From contig NC_069008.1 in assembly GCF_001194135.2 (NCBI RefSeq), forward strand, positions 15,832,704 to 15,865,416: a DNA stretch of 32,713 nucleotides, read 5' to 3'. Shown here piece after piece: positions 633-32,713 of the stretch (its first letter is position 1; each line of letters begins with the position of its first letter). The position numbers and the translations under genes were made by a program. Origin of the DNA: Octopus bimaculoides (taxonomy: Eukaryota). The notes beneath the pieces were generated by a model, which saw only the letters and a program-made list of their open reading frames with translations, had not been told where the DNA came from and did not search any database.

Positions 633-836
633 GGGAGTGTGAGTGTACGTGCAAATGTCAATGGTATGCTCAAGGTATTGGAAGAGTGTGAGCAAGATAC
701 TACTGATATTAATAGTAATATGGACTGCTTTATCTGTGCAATTCTGAGCCATAGTGCTGACAACGAAATTTTATATATGGATACAAAGGTGAAATTGAGT
801 TAGATAAGCTCGATCGCTGTTCATCTCTAACAGGTT
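633..836 (+). pseudogene. Caspase p20-domain relic (not in the ORF track)
   Basis: The frame from 633 reads GSVSVRANVNGMLKVLEECEQDTTDINSNMDCFICAILSHSADNEILYMDTKVKLS*, then LDRCSSLTG in another frame. This matches CFICAIMSHGGENE...EKCPSLSG of the intact caspase at 24212-25135. The SHG Gly is changed to Ser, there is a stop at 801-803, and a SINE tail interrupts it at ~832. Confidence 0.8.
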
Positions 837-960
837 GTTGTTGGCACTCCGTCGCTTACGACGTCGAGGGTTCCAGTTGATCCGATCAACGGAACAGCCT
901 GCTCGTGAAATTAACGTGCAAGTGGCTGAGCACTCCACAGACACATGTACCCTTAACCTG
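832..960 (-). mobile_element. SINE 3' tail (family Z) ending in (CAA)n
   Basis: The reverse complement (…ccgttgatcggatcaactggaaccctcgacgtcgtaagcgacggagtgccaacaacaac) matches the 3' end of the SINE at 1669-1921. Confidence 0.7.
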
Positions 961-5100: not shown

Positions 5101-5806
5101 ATACGAACTGGATAAATTGAATAACCTAAAAAGTGGATTGACTCAGGGGTTTAGAAGTTGACATTGAGTCATTACCCTATCCCTAACCCTTCAAACTGAA
5201 GTAGATGTAATAGTAAAAAAAATAACAGGTATATTTTTCTTATTGGAGGGCTTATGAGCATTTCCCATGACTTATTCTTAGGTACAGCTTTCGTCTTTAT
5301 GCCTTCCAATGTCATTTGACTGTTCACCTGTACATCAAGCTGTTCTTGATATACAAAGGTGACATAAAAGTGTGCAATGTAGGCCAAATAGCTTGTAAAC
5401 CGTTGGACAAAAGGAAGGTGTAGCCGCAGTCTATAGATCTATTGATTGTAGCACAAGCTTCTATGATTTGATTTGAAAATAATCAGATGTCATGTCTACA
5501 GTTTGTCAGTAAAGAATTGTAAAATTTCCACTGTTGAATGTCTGCTGTTCAATTAATTATCTCATAAAGCTTATGCTGTCGTTTCTCTGTCATTTCAGAA
5601 TGTCTGATGGTATTGGCAGCAGAAGCAATATAGCTTGAGATGATGGTTTAAAGAATAAAGGAACATATACAAAAAACATAAAACTATATTCAGATAAATG
5701 TCTGGTGGAATTGCCATGAAATATTTGCAGAGGACGAGGATATTTGTTAGAAATACAATATAAAAATGGAAAGGAAATCATAAGAAAGAAAGGAAGTTTA
5801 TGGAAA

Positions 5807-7093
5807 ATGTTTGATGTTTGTGCTGCATTAAATGTGAAGAAAGAAAGAAAAAGAAGTGATTTACCTGATAAGATGTCGAAAAAGAAGGGTAAAACTTCAT
5901 ATCAATGTGATATTTGTAAAAAGACATTCCAGAAACAATGTAACCTAACGATTCACAAGAAAAGTCATTCAGGAGAAAAGCCATATCACTGTGAAATATG
6001 TGGTAATTTATTCTTGTTAAAAAATCACTTAACTGTACACAAACGTATTCACACAGGAGAGAGGCCTTACAGCTGTGATATCTGTGGTAAATCTTTCAAA
6101 CAAAGTGGTGACTTAAAGGCTCATAAACGAACTCACACAGGAGAGAAACCATATCGTTGTGATATCTGTGGTAAATCCTTTTCACAAGGCAACCAAGTTA
6201 CTATACACAAACGCATTCATACAGGAGAGAGACCATTTCACTGTGACGTCTGTGGCAAATCCTTCATTGGAAGACATGTCTTAAAGGCCCACAAACGCAT
6301 TCATACTGGAGAAAAACCTTATCACTGTGATATCTGTGGTAAATCATTCACTGGGAGTGGTCACTTAGCCACTCATAAACACATTCATACAGGAGAGAGA
6401 CCTTATCACTGTGATATCTGTGGCAAATCATTCTCTCGTACCCATCACTTATCTTTTCACAAACACATTCATACAGGAGACAAGCCATATCATTGTGATA
6501 TCTGTGGTAAATCATTCTCTCAAAAATCTGGCTCAGTTGTCCACAAACGTATTCATACAAGAGAGAAGCCATATCAATGTGATATCTGTGGTAAATCATT
6601 CTCTCAGGCACATCATGTAACTTCTCACAAAAGCGTTCATACAGGTGAGAAGCCATATCACTGTGATGTCTGTGGTAAATCATTCTCTCAAAAATATGGC
6701 TCAACTGTCCACAAACGTAGTCATACAGGAGAGAAACCATATCACTGTGACATCTGTGCTAAATCATTTTCTCGAACCTGTGACTTAAATAAACACAAAA
6801 TTACTCACACTGGAATCAGACAGCATCACTGTGATATCTGTGGTAAATCATTCTCTGGAAGTGGGGACTTGACTAGACACAACAGGATTCATACAGGGGA
6901 GAAGCCATTTCACTGTGATATCTGTGGCAAATCATTCCCTGAAAAAAGTGTCTTAACTATACACAAACGCATTCACACAGGAGAGAAACCATATCATTGT
7001 GATGTCTGTGGTAAATCTTTCTCTGTAAGTGGTGTTTTAACTAAACACAAACGTATTCATACAGGTGAGAAACCATATCCCTGTATTATTTGA
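5807..7093 (+). CDS. C2H2 zinc-finger protein ZNF-A, 14 tandem fingers (428 aa)
   Basis: Fourteen CxxC-x12-HxxxH units with TGEKP-type linkers. The first in-frame ATG is 5807; the ORF-track start at 5744 is a TTG and that stretch is out of frame in the paralog. Acceptor TTTCAG| at 5598; AATAAA at 7346-7351. Confidence 0.92.
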
Positions 7094-9092: not shown

Positions 9093-10382
9093 TGAATGGT
9101 GTATGAAAAGTCTTGAGCCGCAAAAAAACAAAACATGGTACAAGACTTCTGATGATTTATTTTTCAACATAGTCCCGCCTCGATGGCTGAACAGTTTCTT
9201 CAGTGGTGCTGAAGTGCCATTATCCCAGCATAGAGGAACTTTTTTGTTTGAGACTCCAAGAAACTTCCTGCAGCGTCTATGACGTCTTTGTCACTGGCAA
9301 AATGGCGACCAGCCAGGGCTTTTTTTCATTTTTGGGTATAGATGACAGTCAAAGGGAGATAAGTCTGGCGGATGGGGAACAAGTTCATATCCACAATCAC
9401 GAATTGTTGCCATGGCAACCACTGAGGTGTGGGCTGGAGCATTGTCGTGATGAAAAAGGACTCCCTCTGGTGAGCATTCCCGGCCTTTTTTCTTTGATTG
9501 CTTCTTGGAGGTGTTTCAGTAGCTGAGAATAATACAGCCCTGTCATGATGTGACCCTTTTCAAGGTAATCGATCTGCAAGACACCTTGAGAATCCCAAAA
9601 ATGGACACCATGACCTTGCCAGCTGAAGGAATAACCCTGGCCATCTTTGGGGTAGGAGAAGATGTGTGCTTCCACTGCTTTGATTGTTCTTTGGTTTCAG
9701 GCTGGTAGGGATGGACCCAACTTTCGTCCATAGTAATGAAATGAGCAAGAAAATTCTCTTCATCGGCTTCAAACAGTTCCAGATTGCTCGTGGACAAAGT
9801 GCACCTGGTGCGTTTCTGTTCAGGAGTCAAAAGGCGATGGACCCACTTTGCAGAAACCTTTGAGAACCCAAGTTCTTTTGTCACAATGTTGTCTGCTATT
9901 TCAATTGAGATGTCCAGTCTCTCAGCTATCTGACGACATGATATTCGGCGATTTTGCATTATCATACCAAGAGCAAGGTCAATGTTGTCTTCGGTGGTTG
10001 CAGTTGGAGGTCTCCCTGGTCTGGGATCATCTTCCACACTCTCCCTGCCACGCTGGAATTCATTTACCCAGCGTTTGATTATTGCATATGAAGGAGCATT
10101 GTCTGTTAAGGTTCTCACCATATCTTCATAGATTTCTGATGGAGTCATGCCTTTCAAATGAAGGTACTTTATGACAACACGATACTCAGTTTTCTCCATT
10201 TTGCTTGTAAACTCGACACTTGTTTATTCAAAAATCTGCAACAACAAAAAAATTAAAATATCAGAATCATGAAAATGAGCAAGAATACTCCGAAAAGACT
10301 GTATTAACCAGAAAAAATTATTTCAGCTACCTAGCAGCCCTGTTTCTAGGTTAGGCTCAAAATGTTTCATAGACCCCACTCA
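9093..10382 (-). mobile_element. Full-length degenerate mariner (DD34D) DNA transposon, ~1.29 kb
   Basis: TA dinucleotides at 9091-92 and 10383-84. Imperfect ~30-bp TIRs (TGAATGGTGTATGAAAAGTCTTGAGCC vs TGAGTGGGGTCTATGAAACATTTTGAGCC). A transposase remnant lies inside. Confidence 0.9.
9157..10199 (-). pseudogene. Mariner transposase pseudogene
   Basis: Starts MEKTEYRVVIKYL; has WVHRLL (WVPxxL-like), MDESW, HHDNAPAH and HPP---DLSPFD (YSP deleted); ends DYVEK*. At least three frameshifts and one in-frame stop. Confidence 0.9.
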
Positions 10383-11612
10383 TAGCTCTGCAAGACACTG
10401 ACTTTGAGCCATCTACCTTGACTGTGACTCAAACTTGACTCTAACATTGAACTGACACTTAACTCCAACTAAGAACTCATACAATGACTCTACAACAACT
10501 GACACAGACTCTTTGTACTAGTTGACATCCTCCTTTATAGTGGCTGATTCATACCACTTGTCCCGTGGAAGGGGTGTATCATTTCTACTACAAGTTTTTG
10601 AAACAGTTGTTGAATTCTTCCAAAACTTCAATTCTTATTTTCTGTGGTGAACTAAAAATCATCAAGCACGACATTGCTTTTATGGCAGATATGAAACAGT
10701 TTGTTTCTTGGATTTTTAACCAGAATCGAAACTTTAATCCAGATTTTTCTGAAAGCTTCTTTCTCAGCTGTCATCCTTGGAAATTTATGCAAGTCAACTG
10801 TCATACTCCTTTCACCTTAGATGAATCCTGTTCTTTTCCTGAGCATCTTTAATTCAGCACAGCTTAATGCATTCACCTTGTTTGTTCTCTCGATCTAGTT
10901 TCAGCTTTTTGAACATGTTTAAAAACAGAACACAAACAAAATCTCTCTCTTTCAAGTAGCATTGGGCAGAGTTAACTTGCTTCTCTTTTTTTTTCCTTCA
11001 GCATCTTGCCAGGAGTACATACCTCTTCCTCACATATCTATCTCTTTCTAGCACCTACATCTGATACAAACATTACAAAAGATCTTTGAGACTTTACTAC
11101 TGTTCTCTTACTGCTGGAAAACAGCCATCTTTTACACTGTATCTAACAAGACAAATTGAGATGGATAAATAAACTTTTTAAGAGTATACTTTTCCCCTGC
11201 TCTTAATTCATTTGGTGTATATCACTGTTCCAACCAAACTCTTTGTTAAATGCAGGAATCTAAGAGTTCTTAGTACCATTCAATCTGATATCCCAGGGCC
11301 AAGAAACTGGGATATCCCAGTGCCAAATACATCCATCGCATTGAAAACATGAAAATGATATAAATTACAGGTAAGACGTAAATTTACTCTTTCATATTGT
11401 GAAAGAAAAAAAAATCAGCTCAATAAAGGGTTAATTAAGGTAAATTTTATTTGTGAAATACAACTGTTTTAAATTAGCATTAGGAAGGAGTCTATGCTTG
11501 TGGTGGTGGGTGCTAGGAATGTGGCCTGGGAGCCAAGTTGGAGCAGCAATCTGAAAGAATTTTGGAACCTTTGTGCTAAACTGTCCACACACACATTCAT
11601 TGCAAGGTTTTG

Positions 11613-12849: not shown

Positions 12850-13701
12850 TTATGGTTTTTCTCCGCAATGAATACATTTGTGTGTAGTTAAGGTATTTGG
12901 ATGAGAGAATGATTTACCACAACTATCACAGCGATATGGCTTCTCTCCTGTATGAATACGTTTGTGTACAACTGAGCCAGATTTTTGAGAGAATGATCGA
13001 CCACAGATTTCACATTGATATGGTTTCTCTCCTGTATGAATACGTTTGTGAGAAATGAAAGTACTTCTATAAGAGAATGATTTGCTACAGACATCACACT
13101 GATAAGGTCTCTCTCCTGTATGAATGTGTTTGTGAGCAGCTAAGTGATCACTTCGAGCGAATGATTTACCACAGATTTCACAGTGATGAGGTCTTTCTCC
13201 AGTATGAATGTGTTTGTGAGTCTTTAAGACATGACTCCCAGTGAAGGATTTACCACAGACGTCACAGTGAAATGGTCTCTCTCCTGTATGAATGCGTTTG
13301 TGTATAGTAACTTGGTTGCCTTGTGAAAAGGATTTACCACAGATATCACAACAATAGGGTTTCTCTCCTGTGTGAGTTCGTTTATGAGCCTTTAAGTCAC
13401 CACTTTGCGCCGAAGATTTACCACAGATATCACAGCTGTAAGGCCTCTCTCCTGTGTGAATACGTTTGTGTACAGTTAAGTTATGTTTCAACAAGAATAA
13501 ACTACCACAGATGTCACAGTGAAATGGTCTCTCTCCTGAATGACCTTTTTTGTGAATAGTTAGAATACATTGTTTTTGGAATGTCTTTTTACAAATATCA
13601 CATTGATATGAAGTTTTACCGTTCTTTTTTGACATCTTATCAAGTAAATCACTTCTTTTTCTTTCTTTCTTCACATTTAATGCAGCACAAACATCAGACA
13701 T
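12850..13701 (-). CDS. C2H2 zinc-finger protein ZNF-B, 9 fingers (283 aa), inverted paralog of ZNF-A
   Basis: Leader and fingers 1-5 are nearly identical to ZNF-A. Acceptor TTTCAG| at 13918; AATAAA at 12725-12730 (minus strand), homologous to that of ZNF-A. Confidence 0.92.
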
Positions 13702-19476: not shown

Positions 19477-20517
19477 ATGGAGAACATCAATCACTTGGAC
19501 ACTTCAAACACAACAGTTTTCAACAATATAAATACAGTTAGAGAGACAGACAGAGATGAGAAAGCTGGAGGGGAAAATGTTCTTGAATATCACTGTGAGA
19601 TCTGTAGGAAGACGTTCTCTGCAGAACATGAAGTTTTCAAACACAAAGAAATACACAGGAAGGAAAAACGGTTCTGTTGTGAAATATATGGGAAATATTT
19701 TATCAAGAACAATTTCTTAACAAAACATAAACGAATACACACTGGAGTGAAGCCTTTCCAGTGTGAAATATGTGGAAAAGCATTCTTCAATAGATCTCAC
19801 CTTGAACTTCACAAGCGTAGTCATACAGGAGAAAAACCGTTTCACTGTGAATTATGCGGAAAATCTTTTGTCTCTAATAGTCATTTAACAACACATAAAA
19901 GAATCCACACGGGGGAGAAACCCTATCACTGTGAAATATGTGGGAAATCTTTTATCACAAATGGATTATTAAAAACACATAAAATCACACACAATGGAGA
20001 GAAACCGTTTCACTGTGACATTTGTGGGAAATTATTCTTTAACAGTTCTCATCTTGCAGTTCACAAACGTAGTCACACTGGAGAAAGACCATACCACTGT
20101 GAAATATGTGGGAAATTGTTTGTTTCAAATAGTGATTTAACCAGACACAAACGTATACACACTAAAGAAAAACCCTATCGTTGTGAAATATGTGGAAAAT
20201 CATTTATATATAATTATTATTTAACAAGTCACAGAAGAATACACACAGGAGAGAAACTATATCATTGTGAAGTGTGTGGAAAGTCGTTCTCTGGTAATTC
20301 TAGTCTTGTAGTTCACAACCGATTACATACAGGGGAAAAACCCTATCCTTGCGAAATATGTGGGAAAGCATTCGTTAATAATTCTCATCTTGTGGTTCAC
20401 AAACGTAGTCACACTGGAGAAAAACCCTATCGTTGTGAAATATGTGGAAAATCATTTATGACAAACAGCCACTTAAAAAGACATGCACAAATACACACTG
20501 GAGAGAAGCCTTTTTGA
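19477..20517 (+). CDS. C2H2 zinc-finger protein ZNF-C, 11 fingers (finger 2 broken: CEIY)
   Basis: ATG in good context (AACATGG). CEICGK-type fingers with TGEKP linkers; a different subfamily from ZNF-A/B. Confidence 0.92.
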   Translation: MENINHLDTSNTTVFNNINTVRETDRDEKAGGENVLEYHCEICRKTFSAEHEVFKHKEIHRKEKRFCCEIYGKYFIKNNFLTKHKRIHTGVKPFQCEICGKAFFNRSHLELHKRSHTGEKPFHCELCGKSFVSNSHLTTHKRIHTGEKPYHCEICGKSFITNGLLKTHKITHNGEKPFHCDICGKLFFNSSHLAVHKRSHTGERPYHCEICGKLFVSNSDLTRHKRIHTKEKPYRCEICGKSFIYNYYLTSHRRIHTGEKLYHCEVCGKSFSGNSSLVVHNRLHTGEKPYPCEICGKAFVNNSHLVVHKRSHTGEKPYRCEICGKSFMTNSHLKRHAQIHTGEKPF

Positions 20518-23075: not shown

Positions 23076-24080
23076 ACGGAAATTGCCGAACAATCCGCTG
23101 CAAGAAAATGACAGGAAAATCACAAGATTGAAAGCCTCAACGAAACATTGCGCTACAGGCAAACAAAATAACATCAGAATCTTTCCTTCATTTTAATAAA
23201 CACAGGACTAATGTAAAAGCAGATATATTTTATTCTTACGTTGGCAATTCAAAGACTTTATGTTAACAGCGGACAAATTTCATTAGGAAATCATCCACCA
23301 GATTTTTTAAAATAGCAGAAGAATTGAAAAAACATTGCGCAATGGTGCTGACCTATTATAATGCAAACAGAAAAGAAAGAAAAACAATTACTCTTTGGCA
23401 GACAAAGTTTTACGAAGCCAAGAAAATATGAATGTACATAAATAAAATAGCCTACATATTAATATTGTTCATATTTAGTTGTATATAAAGCAACGTTGTT
23501 TCAATTTTCAGAGTGAAGAGTTATTTTGAAATTTAGAATGTTCCTAGAAGCAAATGTCGTCTTTAAGCAAACATGAAATGACAGTAAAAAAGTAAAAATT
23601 ATTTACGGAAATTTCCGAACAATAAGCTGCAAGAAAATAACAGGTAAATGACAAGATTGCCTTTTCAATCACACTTCAAATATTTTAAGAAATTAAGAAC
23701 TAGCGTAAAAGCAAATACATTTTATTATTTCTTCGGCATTTCGAAGACTTTATTATAATAACAAAATTTATAAGGATTTAAAAATTAGCAGAAGAATTGG
23801 AAAAGCATTAAGCAATGCTGCTGAGATAGAATAACGCCGTGAGAAAGAAAGAAAAACAATTTCTCTTTGGCAGAAACTTTAACGAATCCAGCGATATATG
23901 AAAGCACATGAATAAAATAGCCTGCATATTAATGTTGTTCATATTTAATCGTATATAAAAGAATGTTTGTTCAATTTCCAGAGGGAAGAGTTATTTTGAA
24001 ATTTAAAATGTTCCTAGAAAGCAATGGTGTCATTAGTAAAATTTATGGTAGGAAATAGCGTTAGTGAAACATCTTATTAG
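23076..24080 (+). repeat. Module M, two tandem ~0.5-kb copies (23076-23560, 23603-24080); others at 27525-27650 (partial), 31663-32220 (+) and 32220-32430 (-)
   Basis: Shared ACGGAAATT.CCGAACAAT…GCAAGAAAAT, TAGCAGAAGAATTG.AAAA.CAT, AATAAAATAGCCT.CATATTAAT and TTCAATTT.CAG|AG.GAAGAG. Confidence 0.9.
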
Positions 24081-24211
24081 ATGATATTTCTGAAACCAAA
24101 TCAAGTTTGGCGGTGTTTGGTTGTAACCACAAACTAATTGTTTTTTCAAAAAAACATCTGATGTCTGAATTCATAAGCAAAAGGTTTAAACGTTGTTTTT
24201 AATTCATTGTA

Positions 24212-25135
24212 TCAAGCCCATCTCAGTACCGCAAGTTTAAGCAAAATACTCATTAGCACACCGCTCGAGAATAAAAGACAGATTAGATTCTTCTTTTTTT
24301 TTTCTTCTTTTTCTTCTTCTTTTTTGCTCCTCGGTTCAAACTTTAGTTGTTTGAGCAATGTCGACATAATCTGAGGCATTTGTTTCATGCCCTTTTTGTC
24401 TTCAGTGTCGAATTCAGAAGAAGCAACATAGTTAGAGACAGCGGTTAAAAGTGTCAAGATTTCATATTTAGTGCCATATTCAATCAAAAACTTACTTAAA
24501 GCTTGCATATATTTCGAACCCTGTTTTGAATGCCTGTATGACGTATGTTCATTATACGATGAATGAAAAACCAACAGATCTGGCATAATTGGAATATTGA
24601 TTAACGTTTCATTAACTTCTGTTTCAAGTCCATCAGGTACGTGGACTCCTTCATCTTTCTTTTTTCCACGACATGCTTGAACAAAAATTAATTTAGGTAC
24701 TCCGCTTAAAGATGGACACTTCTCGGGTGTCAGGTAAGAAAGCAATTCATGTAGCCCAACCTCCTGTTCGTCCGATCCAGATATCATCTCGTTTTCACCA
24801 CCATGGCTCATAATTGCACAAATAAAGCAACCAATATTGATATAACGTTTATCTTTAAACCCTTTGAAAGCATTGAGCATTTCGTCGGCTGTATTATCTT
24901 GCTTAACTGTGATATCCCCTTCAGAAAATCCAAGTTCTATTAATGCCGCTTTAAAATCTCTTGTGTCTTTTGATGAGCTTTCACGATTTCCAAGCTTTAT
25001 GAACTTTTTGTTGTTGAAGATGTAGGCTACACGTTCCTTTTTAGCATCCATATCATAATTGGCGGAATATTCACTGAGATCAAATGGTGAAGGAGGCTGA
25101 ACGCCTGGTCTAACGTTTGCACTTCCAGCGTCCAT
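24212..25135 (-). CDS. Single-exon caspase (caspase-3/7-like, short prodomain) with a C-terminal hydrophobic extension (307 aa)
   Basis: Intact SHG and QACRG; S1-pocket Arg equivalents in NRESSSKD and SYRHSKQGS; candidate linker cleavage at VPD|G. First ATG at 25135 in strong context (ACTATGG); the ORF-track start at 25144 is TTG. Orthology is not established. Confidence 0.92.
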   Translation of the reverse strand: MDAGSANVRPGVQPPSPFDLSEYSANYDMDAKKERVAYIFNNKKFIKLGNRESSSKDTRDFKAALIELGFSEGDITVKQDNTADEMLNAFKGFKDKRYINIGCFICAIMSHGGENEMISGSDEQEVGLHELLSYLTPEKCPSLSGVPKLIFVQACRGKKKDEGVHVPDGLETEVNETLINIPIMPDLLVFHSSYNEHTSYRHSKQGSKYMQALSKFLIEYGTKYEILTLLTAVSNYVASSEFDTEDKKGMKQMPQIMSTLLKQLKFEPRSKKEEEKEEKKKKNLICLLFSSGVLMSILLKLAVLRWA

Positions 25136-25226: not shown

Positions 25227-25605
25227 TTAACGAAATCCAACTCCTGGCTTCCAACTCAAAATATGCACATGCATCAGAAATTCTCACCCTAAGAATCTGC
25301 GTTTCTATTTAAGGATCCCACACCTTAAAGGGTTACAGGAAAAGATATCTGAAGGCTGAACTCATAGGTAAGAGGGTTAAACGTTCAGATGCGCGGTGTT
25401 CAATATCAATAAAAAGTCATTCTTCCCTTATTTGGCTTTCAAAATTTCGGCAATGTTTCGTTGATGGTTTAAATCTTCGGCAATTTCCGTAACGAAATTT
25501 TTATTTCTTTATTTTCATTTAGTTCATGTTGAAGGCGACATTTGCTTAGAAATCGGTGAAGGAGGGGAAAAGTGAACTACACCGTAGAGTGCGTGCGCAA
25601 TCAAT

Positions 25606-26181: not shown

Positions 26182-27421
26182 NNNNNNNNNNNNNNNNNNN
26201 NNNNNNNNNNNNNNNNNNNNNNNNNNNNNNNNNNNNNNNNNNNNNNNNNNNNNNNNNNNNNNNNNNNNNNNNNNNNNNNNNNNNNNNNNNNNNNNNNNNN
26301 NNNNNNNNNNNNNNNNNNNNNNNNNNNNNNNNNNNNNNNNNNNNNNNNNNNNNNNNNNNNNNNNNNNNNNNNNNNNNNNNNNNNNNNNNNNNNNNNNNNN
26401 NNNNNNNNNNNNNNNNNNNNNNNNNNNNNNNNNNNNNNNNNNNNNNNNNNNNNNNNNNNNNNNNNNNNNNNNNNNNNNNNNNNNNNNNNNNNNNNNNNNN
26501 NNNNNNNNNNNNNNNNNNNNNNNNNNNNNNNNNNNNNNNNNNNNNNNNNNNNNNNNNNNNNNNNNNNNNNNNNNNNNNNNNNNNNNNNNNNNNNNNNNNN
26601 NNNNNNNNNNNNNNNNNNNNNNNNNNNNNNNNNNNNNNNNNNNNNNNNNNNNNNNNNNNNNNNNNNNNNNNNNNNNNNNNNNNNNNNNNNNNNNNNNNNN
26701 NNNNNNNNNNNNNNNNNNNNNNNNNNNNNNNNNNNNNNNNNNNNNNNNNNNNNNNNNNNNNNNNNNNNNNNNNNNNNNNNNNNNNNNNNNNNNNNNNNNN
26801 NNNNNNNNNNNNNNNNNNNNNNNNNNNNNNNNNNNNNNNNNNNNNNNNNNNNNNNNNNNNNNNNNNNNNNNNNNNNNNNNNNNNNNNNNNNNNNNNNNNN
26901 NNNNNNNNNNNNNNNNNNNNNNNNNNNNNNNNNNNNNNNNNNNNNNNNNNNNNNNNNNNNNNNNNNNNNNNNNNNNNNNNNNNNNNNNNNNNNNNNNNNN
27001 NNNNNNNNNNNNNNNNNNNNNNNNNNNNNNNNNNNNNNNNNNNNNNNNNNNNNNNNNNNNNNNNNNNNNNNNNNNNNNNNNNNNNNNNNNNNNNNNNNNN
27101 NNNNNNNNNNNNNNNNNNNNNNNNNNNNNNNNNNNNNNNNNNNNNNNNNNNNNNNNNNNNNNAGTATATCTGAAGCCTGCCCGCATAGGTAAAAGGGTTA
27201 AACGGTCAGATGTAAAATATACATAAAATGACTGTCTTTCAGTTTTTGGAATTCAAAAATTCGGCAATGTTTCGTTGATGGTCTAAATCTTCGGTAATTT
27301 CCGTCACGAATATTTATTTATTTACTTTTTCTTTTCAAATCCTTTTGAAGGTGACGTTTGCTTCGAAATCGGTGAGGGAGGTGAAAGGTGGAATAGACCG
27401 GAGTGCGCGTGCGGTATTATT

Positions 27422-28211: not shown

Positions 28212-28875
28212 CTAAAGCATATTCTTTTCGTATAATATGCAGAGGCATAAGAAATTCTCGCAGTAAGAAGCTCCATATCCATTTAAGGATTCCACACCTG
28301 NNNNNNNNNNNNNNNNNNNNNNNNNNNNNNNNNNNNNNNNNNNNNNNNNNNNNNNNNNNNNNNNNNNNNNNNNNNNNNNNNNNNNNNNATGGTGTTTCGA
28401 ATAATACAAACTCTGGAATTCAAAAGAGACAAGATAATTTGAATCCGAATCTAGCATCATCGATTTTTTTAATCCCACAACCTGCTTGAATAAAGACTAA
28501 TTTAGGTATTCCTTATAATGATGGACAGCAATCGAGTCTCGGGCAAGAAAGCAATGCATCTAGCTTCACTTCATCGTCGTATCCATATATAGCCTCGTTT
28601 TCTGCACCATGACTCAGAATTGCACAAATAAAGCGATTAATAACGATTTCAGGATTATCTTGCTCAAACTCTTTCATCAAAAGACGATGATTTAAAAAGG
28701 GCATAGGATAATCTTCGTTTTATGAAGATTAGCTCAGCTTTTATACAGATGTAAGAGTTGGACAAATGTTTGAGTGCTGAATCTGTATAAAAGCTGAGGT
28801 CATCATCATGAAATCAAGATTTTCTCATGCCCTTTTTAACTTCTTCGTCTTTTGATGAGCCTTCTTTTGTGTTCG
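28212..28875 (-). pseudogene. Caspase pseudogene 2 (internal fold-back hairpin, stop codon, QAGCG)
   Basis: KEGSSKD…[hairpin]…LMKEFEQDNPEIVINRFICAILSHGAENEAIYGYDDEVKLDALLSCPRLDCCPSL*GIPKLVFIQAGCG. The part beyond the gap (28212-28300) is only weakly similar. Confidence 0.88.
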
Positions 28876-29189
28876 TAGGTGTGTGTGTATGTGTGTGTAT
28901 GTGTGTCTCTCTATCTGTGTCTTCGTAAGCGTGTAGGTGGTATGTGTGCATTTGATTCCGGTCGAGTATGAGTGTACGCGCGAGCGTTTGCGAAATAAAA
29001 AACATGATTTCCTACAAAAACAAAAGCTGAAATTCTATATCGAAATAAATTCTCAATTAAATTATCTTAATTTTAATTCATTGTATTATCCCCATCAAAG
29101 TACTTCAAGTTTAGTCCCTGGCCATATCCGTCCCAAGAGGATTCCGAATCAGAGTGCTTCACAGATTTTACACAAACACACACACATAC

Positions 29190-30690: not shown

Positions 30691-32483
30691 GTGTATATGA
30701 CATTACAGGATGTCTTTGGGGCCACTTCAGCTTTGTATCGCAAAACAGTTTCATTTTCCAAGGACAAATTAATTTCACTGTAAAATAACGGTCAATTGCA
30801 TGTTAAACGCTCTCGTATATAAGTGTGTTGTGAATGAAAGAGAGCGTGTGTGTGTGTGCGTATGTCTGTGTATGTCTGCGTGTGTGTCTCTGTGTGTGTA
30901 TGTGTGTGTGTGTGTGTATGTATTTGTATGAAATCTTCATAGTTTTCTTAAATTGAATTCTTCTGGTAGGGATACGGAGATCTTAGCTGAAATTAATCGA
31001 ATGAATTACAACCAAGGTGTAGTTATGGTGAAGAAAACATATATTCCCAGCTTTTCTTTCAACCATATCCAAATTTTTAGTGAGGGATTCATCTTTTTCT
31101 TGCACATTTCTTCTACATTCACATTTTTCTTCTACGCAGGCGCAAAGTAACATATCCAATACGTCTAACATAAGGAGTGTTGTACTTTTGGAAAGCAGGA
31201 AAATATATGAGAAGCAACATAGGATCTTTTTTCTAGAAGCCTGAAATTGAAAAAAATAATTTTACAGATTCATAATCTCCGTATTTCTCAACGTCGTTTC
31301 TTTAAAAAATTTAACATTTTTTTTTTTAATTGTAAAATAAAACACATTTGGCTGGGAAAGAAGAAATTTCATTTTGGAAAATTTCTTTTTTATTCTGGGA
31401 AAATGGTAATCTTCCATAACGAAAACATCGGAATGAGTAAGAAATTTTTGAAAACAAATATGCAGTTGGGGTTGGGGTAAACCCGCCGAAAATTGAAACA
31501 GAAGGGATTACATAGAAACATATCTGAAGGCTGAACTCATCAGTGAGATTGTTAAAGGTTCAATATTGATCAAATGTCTTTCCTTCAGGAGTTGGCATTT
31601 AAAAATTTGAGCAATGTTTCGTTGATGGTCTAAATCTTCGGCAGTTTCCGTAACGAACTACTTACGGAAATTATCGAGCAATCAGATGCAAGAAAATAAA
31701 AAGATTGAACCCATGATCGAAACATTGCGTTGCAGGCAAAGAAAATTACAGAAACAGTTTTCATTCACACTTTACATATTTTAATAAATTAAGAACTGGC
31801 GTAAAAGTTGATAGATTTTTATTATGTTGTTGGAAATTCAGAGATGTCACATTAATATGAGACTAATTTTATTAGGAGATTATCCATAAGATTTAAAAAA
31901 GAATAGCAGAATAATTGAAAAAATATTACGCAATGGGGCTGAGATAGTTTAATGCAGTGAGAGAAGAAAGAAAAACGATTTCTCTTTGGCAAACAAACTT
32001 TTACTGATCCAGCGATATATGAAAATACATGAATAAAATAGCCTACATATTAATATTGTTCATATTTAGTTGTATATAAAAAAATGTTAGTTCAATTTTC
32101 AAAGTGTAGAATTATTGTGAAATTTAGAATGGACCTATAAGGCCCTGGTGTTCTTAGTAAAATTTACGGGAGGAAATAGTTTTAGTCAAGCACCTTAAAA
32201 TGTTAGAGGATATTTATTTAACGAAAATCAATTTGTAGGTTATTTTATTCCTGTGCTTTCATACATCGCTGGATTCGTAAAACATTGTCTGCGAAACAGC
32301 AATTGGTTTTCTTTTGTCTTCTCCCTGCATTACACTTTCTCAGCATCATTGCGTAATATTTCTTCAATTCTTCGGCTATTTGTTTCGCTCTGGTGGATAA
32401 TCTCCTGTTATTAACATAATGACTCCGAAATGACAACGAAATAATAAAATGTAGCAGCGTTTACGTTAGTCTTTCGTGTATCG

Positions 32484-32713
32484 CAGAATTGCACAAATAA
32501 ATCGATTAATAACGATTTCAGGATTATCTTGCTCAAACTCTTTCATCAAAACACGGAGATGTTAAAAAGGGCATGAGAAAATCTTGATTTCATGATGATG
32601 ACCTCAGCTTTTATACAGATTCAGCACTCAAACATTTGTCCAACTCTTACATCTGTATAAAAGCTGAGCTAATCTTCATAAAACGAAGATTATCCTATGC
32701 CCTTTTTAAATCA
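32484..32713 (-). pseudogene. Caspase pseudogene 3 (hairpin copy; runs off the window end)
   Basis: LMKEFEQDNPEIVINRFICAIL, then homology is lost at ~32484. Hairpin core is identical to pseudogene 2 but inverted. Confidence 0.85.

What the first reader, a model, noticed from the sequence alone, without database searches (positions are those of the whole stretch)
24212..24330. Caspase with a candidate C-terminal membrane (tail) anchor
The caspase fold ends at about LKQLKF. The ORF continues through a purine-only stretch (EPRSKKEEEKEEKKKK) into 21 mostly hydrophobic residues, LICLLFSSGVLMSILLKLAVL (24286-24224), then RWA*. Basic flank, TM segment and short basic end is the layout of tail-anchored ER/mitochondrial proteins such as the Bcl-2 family. 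I do not know this layout from canonical caspases. The A-rich stretch could be an old poly(A) tail or slippage tract, implying a de novo anchor on an intronless gene. Caveat: a T10 homopolymer (24294-24303) sets the frame, and a 1-nt shift gives either an early stop (…RRI*) or a polar tail.
Basis: partly seen in the sequence, partly recalled or inferred. Interest (0 to 1): 0.75.

Follow-up and report, generated by a model that had tools for sequence, protein, structure and literature searches.

The report
Octopus caspase with young hydrophobic tail
An intact octopus caspase gene does end in a membrane-anchor-like tail, but the tail occurs only in this species' copy, is made of non-coding DNA read after the usual stop codon was lost, and depends on a fragile A10 run, so it is more likely a young accident than an established anchor.

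Summary
Window 25135..24212 (-) is a single-exon, 307-aa caspase-3/7-like gene of Octopus bimaculoides with SHG and QACRG intact. After the caspase fold ends (LKQLKF) it runs on for 41 residues: a 38-nt purine-only tract containing an A10 run, then a 21-residue segment hydrophobic enough to span a membrane (Kyte-Doolittle 19-mer 2.24; the rest of the protein peaks at 0.85), then RWA and the stop. AlphaFold2 models residues 271-306 as one helix.

The functional reading is weak. Most of the 26 Octopus homologs stop 0-6 residues after LKF. The positional orthologs in O. vulgaris and O. sinensis share both flanks but carry an unrelated basic tail. Homology breaks exactly at the purine tract and resumes 18 nt after the stop. 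The last 43 nt match a dispersed non-coding repeat. No other protein in the database shares the tail.

Random read-through of local non-coding DNA gives tails this hydrophobic in 4-6% of extensions of at least 25 codons. A 1-nt change in the A10 run removes the segment.

Best reading: a young, lineage-specific stop-loss extension that resembles a tail anchor by composition. A real anchor remains possible, at about 15-20%. Expression and run length are untested.

The parts
24212..25135 (-). Complete single-exon caspase CDS (307 aa plus stop), Octopus bimaculoides chromosome CM046628.1
   Evidence: ORF and translation. A gene with exactly this product is called on GCA_001194135.2. The same 307-aa sequence is held by NCBI, UniRef, EukProt and MetaClust.
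24344..25033 (-). Caspase (Peptidase_C14) domain, aa 35-264. Catalytic His in SHG at 24808-24800 and catalytic Cys in QACRG at 24679-24665
   Evidence: Pfam E=9e-48. PDB caspase-7/-8/-3 hits at E~1e-30, with the S1-pocket Arg residues aligned. Motif coordinates. AF2 gives a caspase fold, mean pLDDT 78.
24338..24355 (-). LKQLKF, the last strand of the caspase fold. Most paralogs stop 0-6 codons after it
   Evidence: Alignment A2 and PDB alignments.
24288..24325 (-). 38-nt purine-only tract encoding KKEEEKEEKKKK(N). It is the longest purine run in the window and begins right after the point where orthology with O. vulgaris and O. sinensis breaks (24327/24321)
24294..24303 (-). A10 homopolymer that sets the frame of the hydrophobic tail
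   Evidence: +/-1 nt gives ...KKRRI* or a polar 32-aa tail.
24224..24286 (-). 21 codons LICLLFSSGVLMSILLKLAVL, a TM-like segment (T at the second codon position in 67% of codons)
   Evidence: KD19 2.24. Helix in AF2, pLDDT ~76. Codon composition.
24197..24239 (-). 43 nt covering codons (L)KLAVLRWA, the stop and the ATTAAA. 84% identical to the terminus of a dispersed non-coding repeat (window 29113-29071; L002 3066-3027 and 7381-7338; L004 2898-2860 and 7077-7034)
   Evidence: blastn E=5e-7. The TM-coding part upstream of it (24292-24240) has no significant match.
24198..24203 (-). ATTAAA, a candidate poly(A) signal 9 nt after the stop (inferred; no transcript data)
   Evidence: It is part of the repeat terminus.
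24079..24194 (-). 3' flank where orthology resumes (89% to O. vulgaris L002 12172-12287 and 90% to O. sinensis L004 12995-13110). Its first 46 nt are also a direct repeat of 25385-25340 upstream of the gene
25302..25324 (-). Upstream copy of the conserved motif GGTGTGGGATCCTTAAATAGAAA. In the paralogs this motif also follows the stop codon. The downstream copy is missing from this gene

Best explanation
This is a young, lineage-specific C-terminal extension of an otherwise intact, probably active effector-type caspase. It is not a conserved domain.

The octopus-specific caspase family normally ends ...LKFEP(K/R)(K/N/R)*, followed by a conserved 3'UTR motif. In the ortholog group of this gene that stop has been lost. 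In O. bimaculoides the 3' end was also remodelled. The frame now runs through a 38-nt purine microsatellite-like tract into about 95 nt of non-coding DNA, whose last 43 nt derive from a dispersed repeat. It ends at a TGA 9 nt before an ATTAAA.

That DNA has T at most second codon positions, so it translates into a 21-residue hydrophobic helix. If the protein is made as annotated, the tail is hydrophobic enough to be captured by the cytosolic triage machinery for C-terminal hydrophobic segments (BAG6/TRC40-GET). The protein would then either be inserted as a tail-anchored protein, most likely in the ER membrane with the caspase domain facing the cytosol on a K/E-rich helical stalk, or be degraded.

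Shown: the sequence, its hydrophobicity, the lack of conservation, the non-coding origin of its end, and the frame's dependence on A10. Inferred: translation, triage and insertion.
For: (1) Most of the 26 Octopus homologs end 0-6 residues after LKF. Only P0002, P0003, P0004, P0007 and P0025 have longer tails, and those are all different and polar or basic.

(2) Positional orthologs. Window 26004-24327 matches O. vulgaris L002 9133-10812 (80.6%). Window 25678-24321 matches O. sinensis L004 9370-10743 (82.9%). Upstream blocks are collinear. The 3' flank 24194-24079 matches L002 12172-12287 (88.8%) and L004 12995-13110 (89.7%). The 132 nt in between have no counterpart in the 1.36 kb or 2.25 kb that separate these blocks in the other species.

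(3) Those orthologs read through into an unrelated basic tail...EPRRGNASSKARKRSRSPLEETDGSSKKRPRKPT*. Its stop differs even between the two sister species. One gene model splices out of it. The C-terminus is therefore labile in this clade.

(4) The canonical paralog 3' end, stop plus AATATTTC..GGTGTGGGATCCTTAAA, is absent here.

(5) The last 43 nt match a non-coding repeat terminus.

(6) The tail has no homolog among 5.8e9 protein clusters.

(7) Chance: TM-like tails arise in 4-16% of random read-throughs of >= 25 codons in this DNA. This agrees with Kesner et al. (bioRxiv 10.1101/2022.07.20.500724), who report that nucleotide bias gives non-coding translation hydrophobic C-termini that BAG6 routes to degradation or membranes.

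(8) The caspase core is under selection to stay open. dN/dS is 0.86-1.10 against the orthologs. Yet an ORF of 269 codons survives 20% random substitution only 0.07% of the time, and SHG, QACRG and the S1 arginines are intact. The gene is therefore likely functional, and the tail is an add-on.
Against: The tail ORF is intact. It has a clean TA-like architecture, with a charged linker predicted as one continuous helix with the TMD. It ends just before a plausible poly(A) signal.

C-terminal TM-like segments are rare in caspases generally. Besides the query itself, only 1 of about 166 related proteins examined has one. If the tail were simply harmful it might have been purged.

The age of the tail cannot be measured, because no genome closer than O. 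vulgaris or O. sinensis was available. Conservation within the O. bimaculoides lineage is therefore untested. There are no expression data in either direction.
Confidence: 0.6

Rival explanations
1. Functional tail anchor. The tail is a newly evolved, selected membrane anchor that tethers an effector-type caspase to the cytosolic face of the ER or outer mitochondrial membrane. This would restrict its substrates or concentrate it for proximity-induced activation.
For: One TM-grade segment (KD19 2.24, comparable to my from-memory values for Bcl-2, Fis1 and Sec61beta tails) lies 3 residues from the C-terminus, and there is no other hydrophobic segment. A K/E-rich helical spacer is modelled. The catalytic core is intact and kept open by selection. 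An independent caspase with the same layout exists in the thrips Frankliniella occidentalis: LOC113216828 ends ...ACLSLILYLLASTILLFK*, and the identical tail appears in a second, Logan-assembled sequence. Kesner et al. propose membrane targeting as a route by which new non-coding-derived tails become functional.
Against: The tail is not conserved in any ortholog or paralog. The frame depends on an uninterrupted A10 run that selection has not broken up. Part of the sequence is repeat-derived. The chance rate is 4-16%. No tail-anchored caspase turned up in four full-text searches or in the bivalve caspase survey (PMC7836458).
Confidence: 0.17
2. Sequence or assembly artefact, or polymorphism, at the A10 run. 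The real allele has 9 or 11 A, and the protein ends ...KKRRI* or in a polar tail, so there is no hydrophobic tail in vivo.
For: Either 1-nt shift removes the TM segment. The window is a draft region with six N gaps and seven A/T homopolymers of >= 10 nt. The two assembly versions are not independent (own knowledge: v2 is a re-scaffolding of the Illumina v1 assembly). No second, independently assembled copy of this protein exists in the collection: cluster size is 1 on 1 contig.
Against: The run lies about 1.9 kb from the nearest gap (26182-27162). Illumina-based consensus is usually reliable at 10-nt runs (own knowledge). The in-frame ORF continues for 28 codons, whereas random extensions have a median of 13 codons.
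Confidence: 0.12
3. The annotated 3' end is not the one used. The mRNA is not expressed, or is spliced or polyadenylated so that the tail is replaced. The O. vulgaris ortholog is modelled with a GTAAG donor inside its own extension and a small downstream exon.
For: O. vulgaris P0002 is modelled with exon 1 at 10001-10834 plus an exon at 13293-13346. Neighbouring cluster members are fragments or catalytically dead. dN/dS is about 1.
Against: The O. vulgaris donor lies in sequence that has no counterpart here. I saw no strong donor consensus in the tail by eye. The core ORF is maintained against expectation.
Confidence: 0.08
4. The gene is a processed retrocopy and the purine tract is its degraded poly(A) tail, with the anchor read from the insertion-site DNA.
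For: The gene is intronless, and an A-rich tract follows the conserved CDS directly.
Against: Most of the clustered family members examined are single-exon and arranged as local clusters with shared 5' and 3' flanks. The orthologs occupy the same position in two other species without any A tract. The tract replaces the stop codon and proximal 3'UTR rather than following a 3'UTR. The only direct repeat flanking the unit (25385-25340 and 24194-24149) is 46 nt long, is shared with the orthologs, and lies 93 nt beyond the tract.
Confidence: 0.03

Closest known systems
Effector caspases of the caspase-3/-7 type (MEROPS C14A, Pfam PF00656)
   Same: Short prodomain, p20/p10 core, SHG and QACRG, S1-pocket arginines. 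PDB caspase-7, -8 and -3 match at E~1e-30.
   Different: Canonical caspases end 2-6 residues after the last strand. This one continues for 41 residues with a charged stalk and a hydrophobic helix. It belongs to an octopus-specific, mostly single-exon, fast-evolving cluster.
Positional orthologs: O. vulgaris caspase-3-like (P0002) and O. sinensis caspase-7-like / caspase-1-like (P0004, P0003)
   Same: Same genomic position, 80-83% nt identity, same ...LKQLKFEPR ending, and the canonical stop is likewise lost.
   Different: Their extension is basic and NLS-like (KARKRSRS...KKRPRK) or a spliced short tail. It has no hydrophobic segment, and its DNA is unrelated to the window's tail.
Tail-anchored proteins (Bcl-2 family, Sec61beta, cytochrome b5, VAMPs)
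   Different: There is no conservation and no evidence of insertion. The TMD carries a Lys four residues from its end. The tail is a few-million-year-scale novelty at most (inference).
Stop-loss or read-through C-terminal extensions handled by BAG6 triage (Kesner et al. bioRxiv 10.1101/2022.07.20.500724; Mueller et al. Cell 2023, PMC10364623)
   Same: The extension is read from former 3'-flank DNA. Its hydrophobicity comes from T-rich codons. The predicted fate is degradation or membrane targeting.
   Different: Here the extension is fixed in the reference genome of a species rather than being a translational error or disease variant. Triage has been studied in mammals and C. elegans, not in cephalopods.
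Frankliniella occidentalis LOC113216828 (P0175, with Logan copy P0063)
   Same: A metazoan Peptidase_C14 protein with QACRG and a TA-like C-terminus (...ACLSLILYLLASTILLFK*, KD19 2.09).
   Different: It is unrelated in origin: an insect protein of 657 aa with a 165-aa low-complexity linker and a long Cys-rich N-terminus. It is uncharacterised, and the tail sequences share nothing.

Membership tests
Caspase (Peptidase C14A) | Peptidase_C14 domain above Pfam gathering score | tested here: met
   163 bits against a cut-off of 21.4, aa 35-264
Caspase (Peptidase C14A) | Catalytic His-Cys dyad in SHG and QACRG | tested here: met
   SHG at aa 110-112 and QACRG at aa 153-157
Caspase (Peptidase C14A) | Asp-binding S1 pocket (Arg, Gln, Arg) | tested here: met
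   R51, Q153 and R200 align with the corresponding caspase-7 residues in the phmmer alignment
Caspase (Peptidase C14A) | Asp-specific proteolytic activity | not testable with these tools
   Needs a recombinant enzyme assay
Tail-anchored membrane protein | Single TM-grade hydrophobic segment within about 30 residues of the C-terminus | tested here: met
   KD19 2.24 at aa 285-303, with 3 residues after the 21-mer. Helix in AF2.
Tail-anchored membrane protein | No signal peptide or other TM segment | tested here: met
   Maximum KD19 in aa 1-266 is 0.85
Tail-anchored membrane protein | TM call by a trained predictor (DeepTMHMM, Phobius, TMHMM) | not testable with these tools
   Only hydropathy scales were computed. 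The summed Hessa-type dG of +0.17 kcal/mol uses values from memory.
Tail-anchored membrane protein | Anchor conserved among orthologs, as expected of a functional targeting signal | tested here: not met
   Absent from all 26 Octopus homologs and from the orthologous DNA of O. vulgaris and O. sinensis. No homolog of the tail anywhere in the database.
Tail-anchored membrane protein | Post-translational membrane insertion and membrane localisation | not testable with these tools
   Experimental
Processed retrogene with poly(A) remnant | A tract at the end of a copied 3'UTR, flanked by short target-site duplications, with no orthologous gene at the same site before insertion | tested here: not met
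   The tract replaces the stop and proximal 3'UTR. Orthologs at the same site lack it. No abutting direct repeat.
Stop-loss extension from non-coding DNA | Ancestral stop position identifiable in relatives, and extension sequence not homologous to coding sequence | tested here: met
   Most paralogs stop at FEP(K/R)(K/N/R)*. The tail end matches a non-coding repeat and has no protein homolog.

The most novel reading that the evidence does not exclude
A de novo evolved tail anchor has turned one member of the octopus-specific caspase expansion into a membrane-tethered effector caspase. This would be a caspase localisation mode that four full-text searches here failed to find described. It would have arisen within one octopus lineage from a purine microsatellite plus repeat-derived non-coding DNA. 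A thrips caspase has possibly acquired a similar tail independently.
Probability: 0.15. Interest if true: 0.7.

Novelty: new variant of a known kind. Interest (0 to 1): 0.3.

Why it matters
If the tail is translated and inserted, this would be a natural example of a protease of the cell-death machinery gaining a membrane address in one step from non-coding DNA. It would also be a concrete case of the proposed route from non-coding read-through, via a hydrophobic C-terminus, to membrane localisation.

If the tail is an unselected accident, as the evidence favours, it matters mainly as an annotation caveat. C-termini in this fast-evolving octopus caspase cluster are labile, and a TM prediction on one paralog should not be read as biology without transcript and ortholog support.

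Tried and rejected
(1) Searching the tail peptide alone (47 aa) against 5.8e9 protein clusters gave no hit at E <= 10.

(2) I looked for the tail-coding DNA in the 1.36-kb and 2.25-kb orthologous intervals of O. vulgaris and O. sinensis by sensitive local alignment. Scores were below shuffled controls.

(3) I tested whether the whole TM-coding part derives from the dispersed repeat. Only the last 43 nt do. The 53 nt upstream score no better than shuffles.

(4) I tested whether the purine tract is homologous to the purine-rich start of the O. vulgaris basic tail. By eye on the gapless alignment about 45% of bases match, which is uninformative given the composition, so this is left open.

(5) Tandem Repeats Finder does not call the purine tract as a repeat at score >= 30.

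(6) A search for target-site duplications around the unit found only the 46-nt flank repeat shared with the orthologs.

(7) Four literature searches for tail-anchored or transmembrane caspases in molluscs or in general found no described case. The bivalve caspase survey mentions no TM caspases.

(8) No independent transcript or assembly copy of the gene exists in the collections, so run length and expression could not be checked.

(9) An unfiltered blastn of the flanks was swamped by (TG)n/(CA)n microsatellites and had to be repeated with filters.

Full report
WHAT THE WINDOW IS. The window is eukaryotic: it carries (TG)n microsatellites and six N gaps and has 38% GC. The ORF's product is found on one 18.6-Mb record, chromosome CM046628.1 of Octopus bimaculoides assembly GCA_001194135.2, at 15856915-15857838. 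All homologs found by the word-indexed search are Octopus caspases.

THE OBSERVATION. On the - strand an ORF runs from ATG 25135 to TGA 24214-24212. It is 307 aa long, has no intron, and is annotated in that form.
- Pfam Peptidase_C14 covers aa 35-264 (E=9e-48).
- Solved caspase-7, -8 and -3 chains align to query aa ~26-268 at E~1e-30. The S1-pocket arginines, SHG (aa 110-112) and QACRG (aa 153-157) are in place.
- The fold ends at LKQLKF (aa 261-266).
- The ORF then continues EPRSKKEEEKEEKKKKN-LICLLFSSGVLMSILLKLAVL-RWA*.
- The 38-nt purine-only run is 24325-24288. The A10 run is 24303-24294. The 21 hydrophobic codons are 24286-24224.
- A9 or A12 gives ...KKRRI*. A8 or A11 gives ...KKKEESNLSFILERCANEYFA*.

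The only slips are the omitted Asn283 and the fact that the purine-only stretch starts after the Ser codon.

IS THE SEGMENT TM-LIKE? The best Kyte-Doolittle 19-mer is 2.24 (aa 285-303), while the caspase core never exceeds 0.85. The segment is therefore in range. A summed Hessa-type dG of +0.17 kcal/mol is borderline but insertion-competent; the scale values are from memory. AlphaFold2, run with the 27-sequence alignment, gives a caspase fold (mean pLDDT 78, pTM 0.74). It models aa 271-306 as one continuous helix at pLDDT ~76, a charged stalk running into the hydrophobic stretch. No trained TM predictor was available.

CONSERVATION. Alignment of the 26 Octopus homologs shows that most end 0-6 residues after LKF, typically FEPKK*, FEPRR* or FEPRN*. 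At the DNA level the paralogs share stop + AATATTTC..GGTGTGGGATCCTTAAATAGAAA..ACGGTGAGAATTTCTGATGCAT. In the window this motif is present upstream of the gene (25324-25302) but not downstream.

The closest proteins are O. vulgaris P0002 and O. sinensis P0003 and P0004, at 61-64% aa identity. P0002 and P0004 are positional orthologs (the P0003 locus was not fetched):
- Window 28858-28414, 27729-27165 and 26004-24327 are collinear with L002 5407-5820, 6405-6914 and 9133-10812.
- L004 behaves the same way, at 76-83% identity.
- Homology resumes at window 24194-24079, which matches L002 12172-12287 (88.8%) and L004 12995-13110 (89.7%).

The break is exactly after GAACCGAGGAG (24327). The 132 nt between the blocks hold the purine tract, the TM codons, the stop and the ATTAAA. 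They have no detectable counterpart in the 1.36 kb (O. vulgaris) or 2.25 kb (O. sinensis) that separate the same blocks there.

In those species the frame also reads past the canonical stop, but into an unrelated basic tail (...EPRRGNASSKARKRSRSPLEETDGSSKKRPRKPT*). The stop of that tail differs between the two sister species, and one gene model splices out of it at a GTAAG donor. C-terminal ends in this clade are thus evolutionarily labile, and the hydrophobic tail is specific to the O. bimaculoides lineage as far as can be seen.

ORIGIN OF THE TAIL DNA. The last 43 nt (24239-24197) cover codons (L)KLAVLRWA, the TGA and the ATTAAA at 24203-24198. They are 84% identical to the terminus of a non-coding repeat present at window 29113-29071 and at two places each in the O. 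vulgaris and O. sinensis loci. Beyond ...AATGAATTAAAA the copies diverge, as at the end of a dispersed element.

The 53 nt upstream of this have no significant match. The tail peptide has no homolog among 5.8 billion protein clusters. Two thirds of the TM codons have T at the second position. This is the composition effect that Kesner et al. describe for translated non-coding DNA.

The retrocopy/poly(A) idea does not fit. The orthologs occupy the same site without an A tract. The tract replaces the stop and proximal 3'UTR. The only flanking direct repeat is a 46-nt block (25385-25340 and 24194-24149) that is shared with the orthologs and lies 93 nt beyond the tract.

CHANCE. I treated every position of the window (gene masked) and of the O. 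vulgaris locus as a virtual read-through start.
- Extensions reach >= 41 codons in 15-19% of cases.
- Among extensions of >= 25 codons, a KD19 >= 1.6 segment lies in the last 30 residues in 11-16%, and a KD19 >= 2.2 segment in 3.6-6.3%.

With several independent stop shifts in the family, one TM-like tail is unremarkable.

IS THE GENE ITSELF ALIVE? dN/dS against the orthologs is 0.86 (dS 0.26) and 1.10 (dS 0.21). That would suit either relaxed constraint or diversifying selection. However, random substitution at 10% or 20% leaves the 269-codon core free of stops only 2% or 0.07% of the time. Both species keep it open with catalytic motifs intact. I infer a functional, fast-evolving caspase. 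By contrast the neighbours P0022 and P0025, about 12 kb upstream and head-to-head, lack the SHG and QACRG motifs.

HOW UNUSUAL IS THE LAYOUT AMONG CASPASES? A full HMMER scan of 1.84 billion representatives gave 4710 hits at E <= 1e-3.
- The median extension beyond that position is 6 residues.
- 33 have >= 20 residues.
- Only two have a KD19 >= 1.6 segment in the last 40 residues: this protein and P0063.

P0063 clusters with Frankliniella occidentalis LOC113216828 (657 aa, Peptidase_C14 E=6e-53). That protein ends ...CLQWCASGACLSLILYLLASTILLFK*, and the same tail is present in both the annotated protein and an independent Logan contig. A TA-like caspase therefore exists at least once elsewhere, and it is uncharacterised.

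Full-text searches for tail-anchored, membrane-anchored or transmembrane caspases found no described case. The bivalve caspase survey PMC7836458 mentions none.

MECHANISM, WITH STATUS.
- Shown: an intact caspase core; a 41-aa extension that is TM-grade hydrophobic; lineage-specific; ending in repeat-derived non-coding DNA; frame set by A10.
- Inferred: the ancestral stop was lost in the ortholog group. The 3' end was then remodelled in the O. bimaculoides lineage, and a purine tract expanded by slippage.
- Inferred from the literature and from general knowledge of TA biogenesis: if translated, the C-terminal hydrophobic helix would be captured after release from the ribosome by the BAG6/SGTA/TRC40 system. 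It would then either be inserted or degraded. High TMD hydrophobicity and only +1 charge after it favour the ER, with the caspase domain cytosolic.

Which outcome dominates is unknown. I put about 60% on an unselected young extension, whatever its biochemical fate. I put about 17% on a selected anchor, about 12% on an A-run error or polymorphism, and the rest on an alternative 3' end or the retrocopy idea.

VERDICT. This is a new variant of a known kind, a caspase-3/7-like paralog with a non-conserved TA-like stop-loss tail. Interest is modest (0.3) unless transcripts and sister-species data show that the tail is expressed and maintained.

Noticed in passing
window 25302-25324 (-), 28276-28298 (-); L002 9811-9876, 13931-13996; 3' ends of paralogs in L002/L003: In each caspase unit checked, the same ~70-nt motif (..GGTGTGGGATCCTTAAATAGAAA..ACGGTGAGAATTTCTGATGCAT) lies both about 125-190 nt upstream of the ATG and about 10 nt after the stop. 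The compact single-exon units are therefore bracketed by direct repeats. This hints at how the family was amplified, by tight tandem duplication or some form of mobilisation.
   Followed up: partly
window 24149-24194 and 25340-25385: A 46-nt direct repeat (80% identity) brackets this gene unit. The same element flanks the O. vulgaris and O. sinensis orthologs.
   Followed up: partly
L003 10001-10744 and 13356-14054 (about 12 kb upstream of the window gene, head-to-head); alignment A2: Many members of the octopus caspase expansion are catalytically dead. P0022, P0025 and P0026 lack the SHG and QACRG motifs. P0013, P0015, P0016, P0019, P0023 and P0024 have (Q/E)ASRG, with Cys replaced by Ser. 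This looks like a family of pseudo-caspases.
   Followed up: no
window 636-857 (+), 28393-28878 (-), 32469-32558 (-): Caspase gene fragments, two of them abutting N gaps. The 28.4-28.9 kb fragment is orthologous to a fragment 4 kb upstream of the O. vulgaris and O. sinensis orthologs, where it carries an in-frame stop (LKF*).
   Followed up: partly
window 5744-7093 (+), 12850-13701 (-), 19477-20517 (+): Three multi-finger C2H2 zinc-finger ORFs (Pfam zf-H2C2_2 E down to 1e-115 for the two scanned). They are interleaved with the caspase cluster and typical of the large octopus C2H2-ZNF expansion.
   Followed up: partly
window 9543-10199 (-): A 218-aa ORF with the HTH_48 and HTH_32 domains of a Mos1/mariner-type transposase. 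Only the N-terminal part is present, so it is probably a decayed mariner copy.
   Followed up: partly
P0175 / P0063 (Frankliniella occidentalis LOC113216828): A thrips caspase-domain protein with a Cys-rich repeated N-terminus, a 165-aa low-complexity linker and a tail-anchor-like C-terminus (...ACLSLILYLLASTILLFK*). The tail is identical in an independent Logan assembly.
   Followed up: partly
P0144 (Littorina saxatilis caspase-3-like isoform X1): A gastropod caspase-3-like protein with an N-terminal hydrophobic segment (aa ~40-58, KD19 2.25). It could be a signal anchor. Isoform X2 is 34 aa shorter.
   Followed up: no
O. vulgaris P0002 vs O. sinensis P0004 (L002 / L004): Between these two very close species the caspase core has dN/dS about 3.7 (dS 0.013, dN 0.048, so small counts). 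This hints at diversifying selection in this caspase clade.
   Followed up: no
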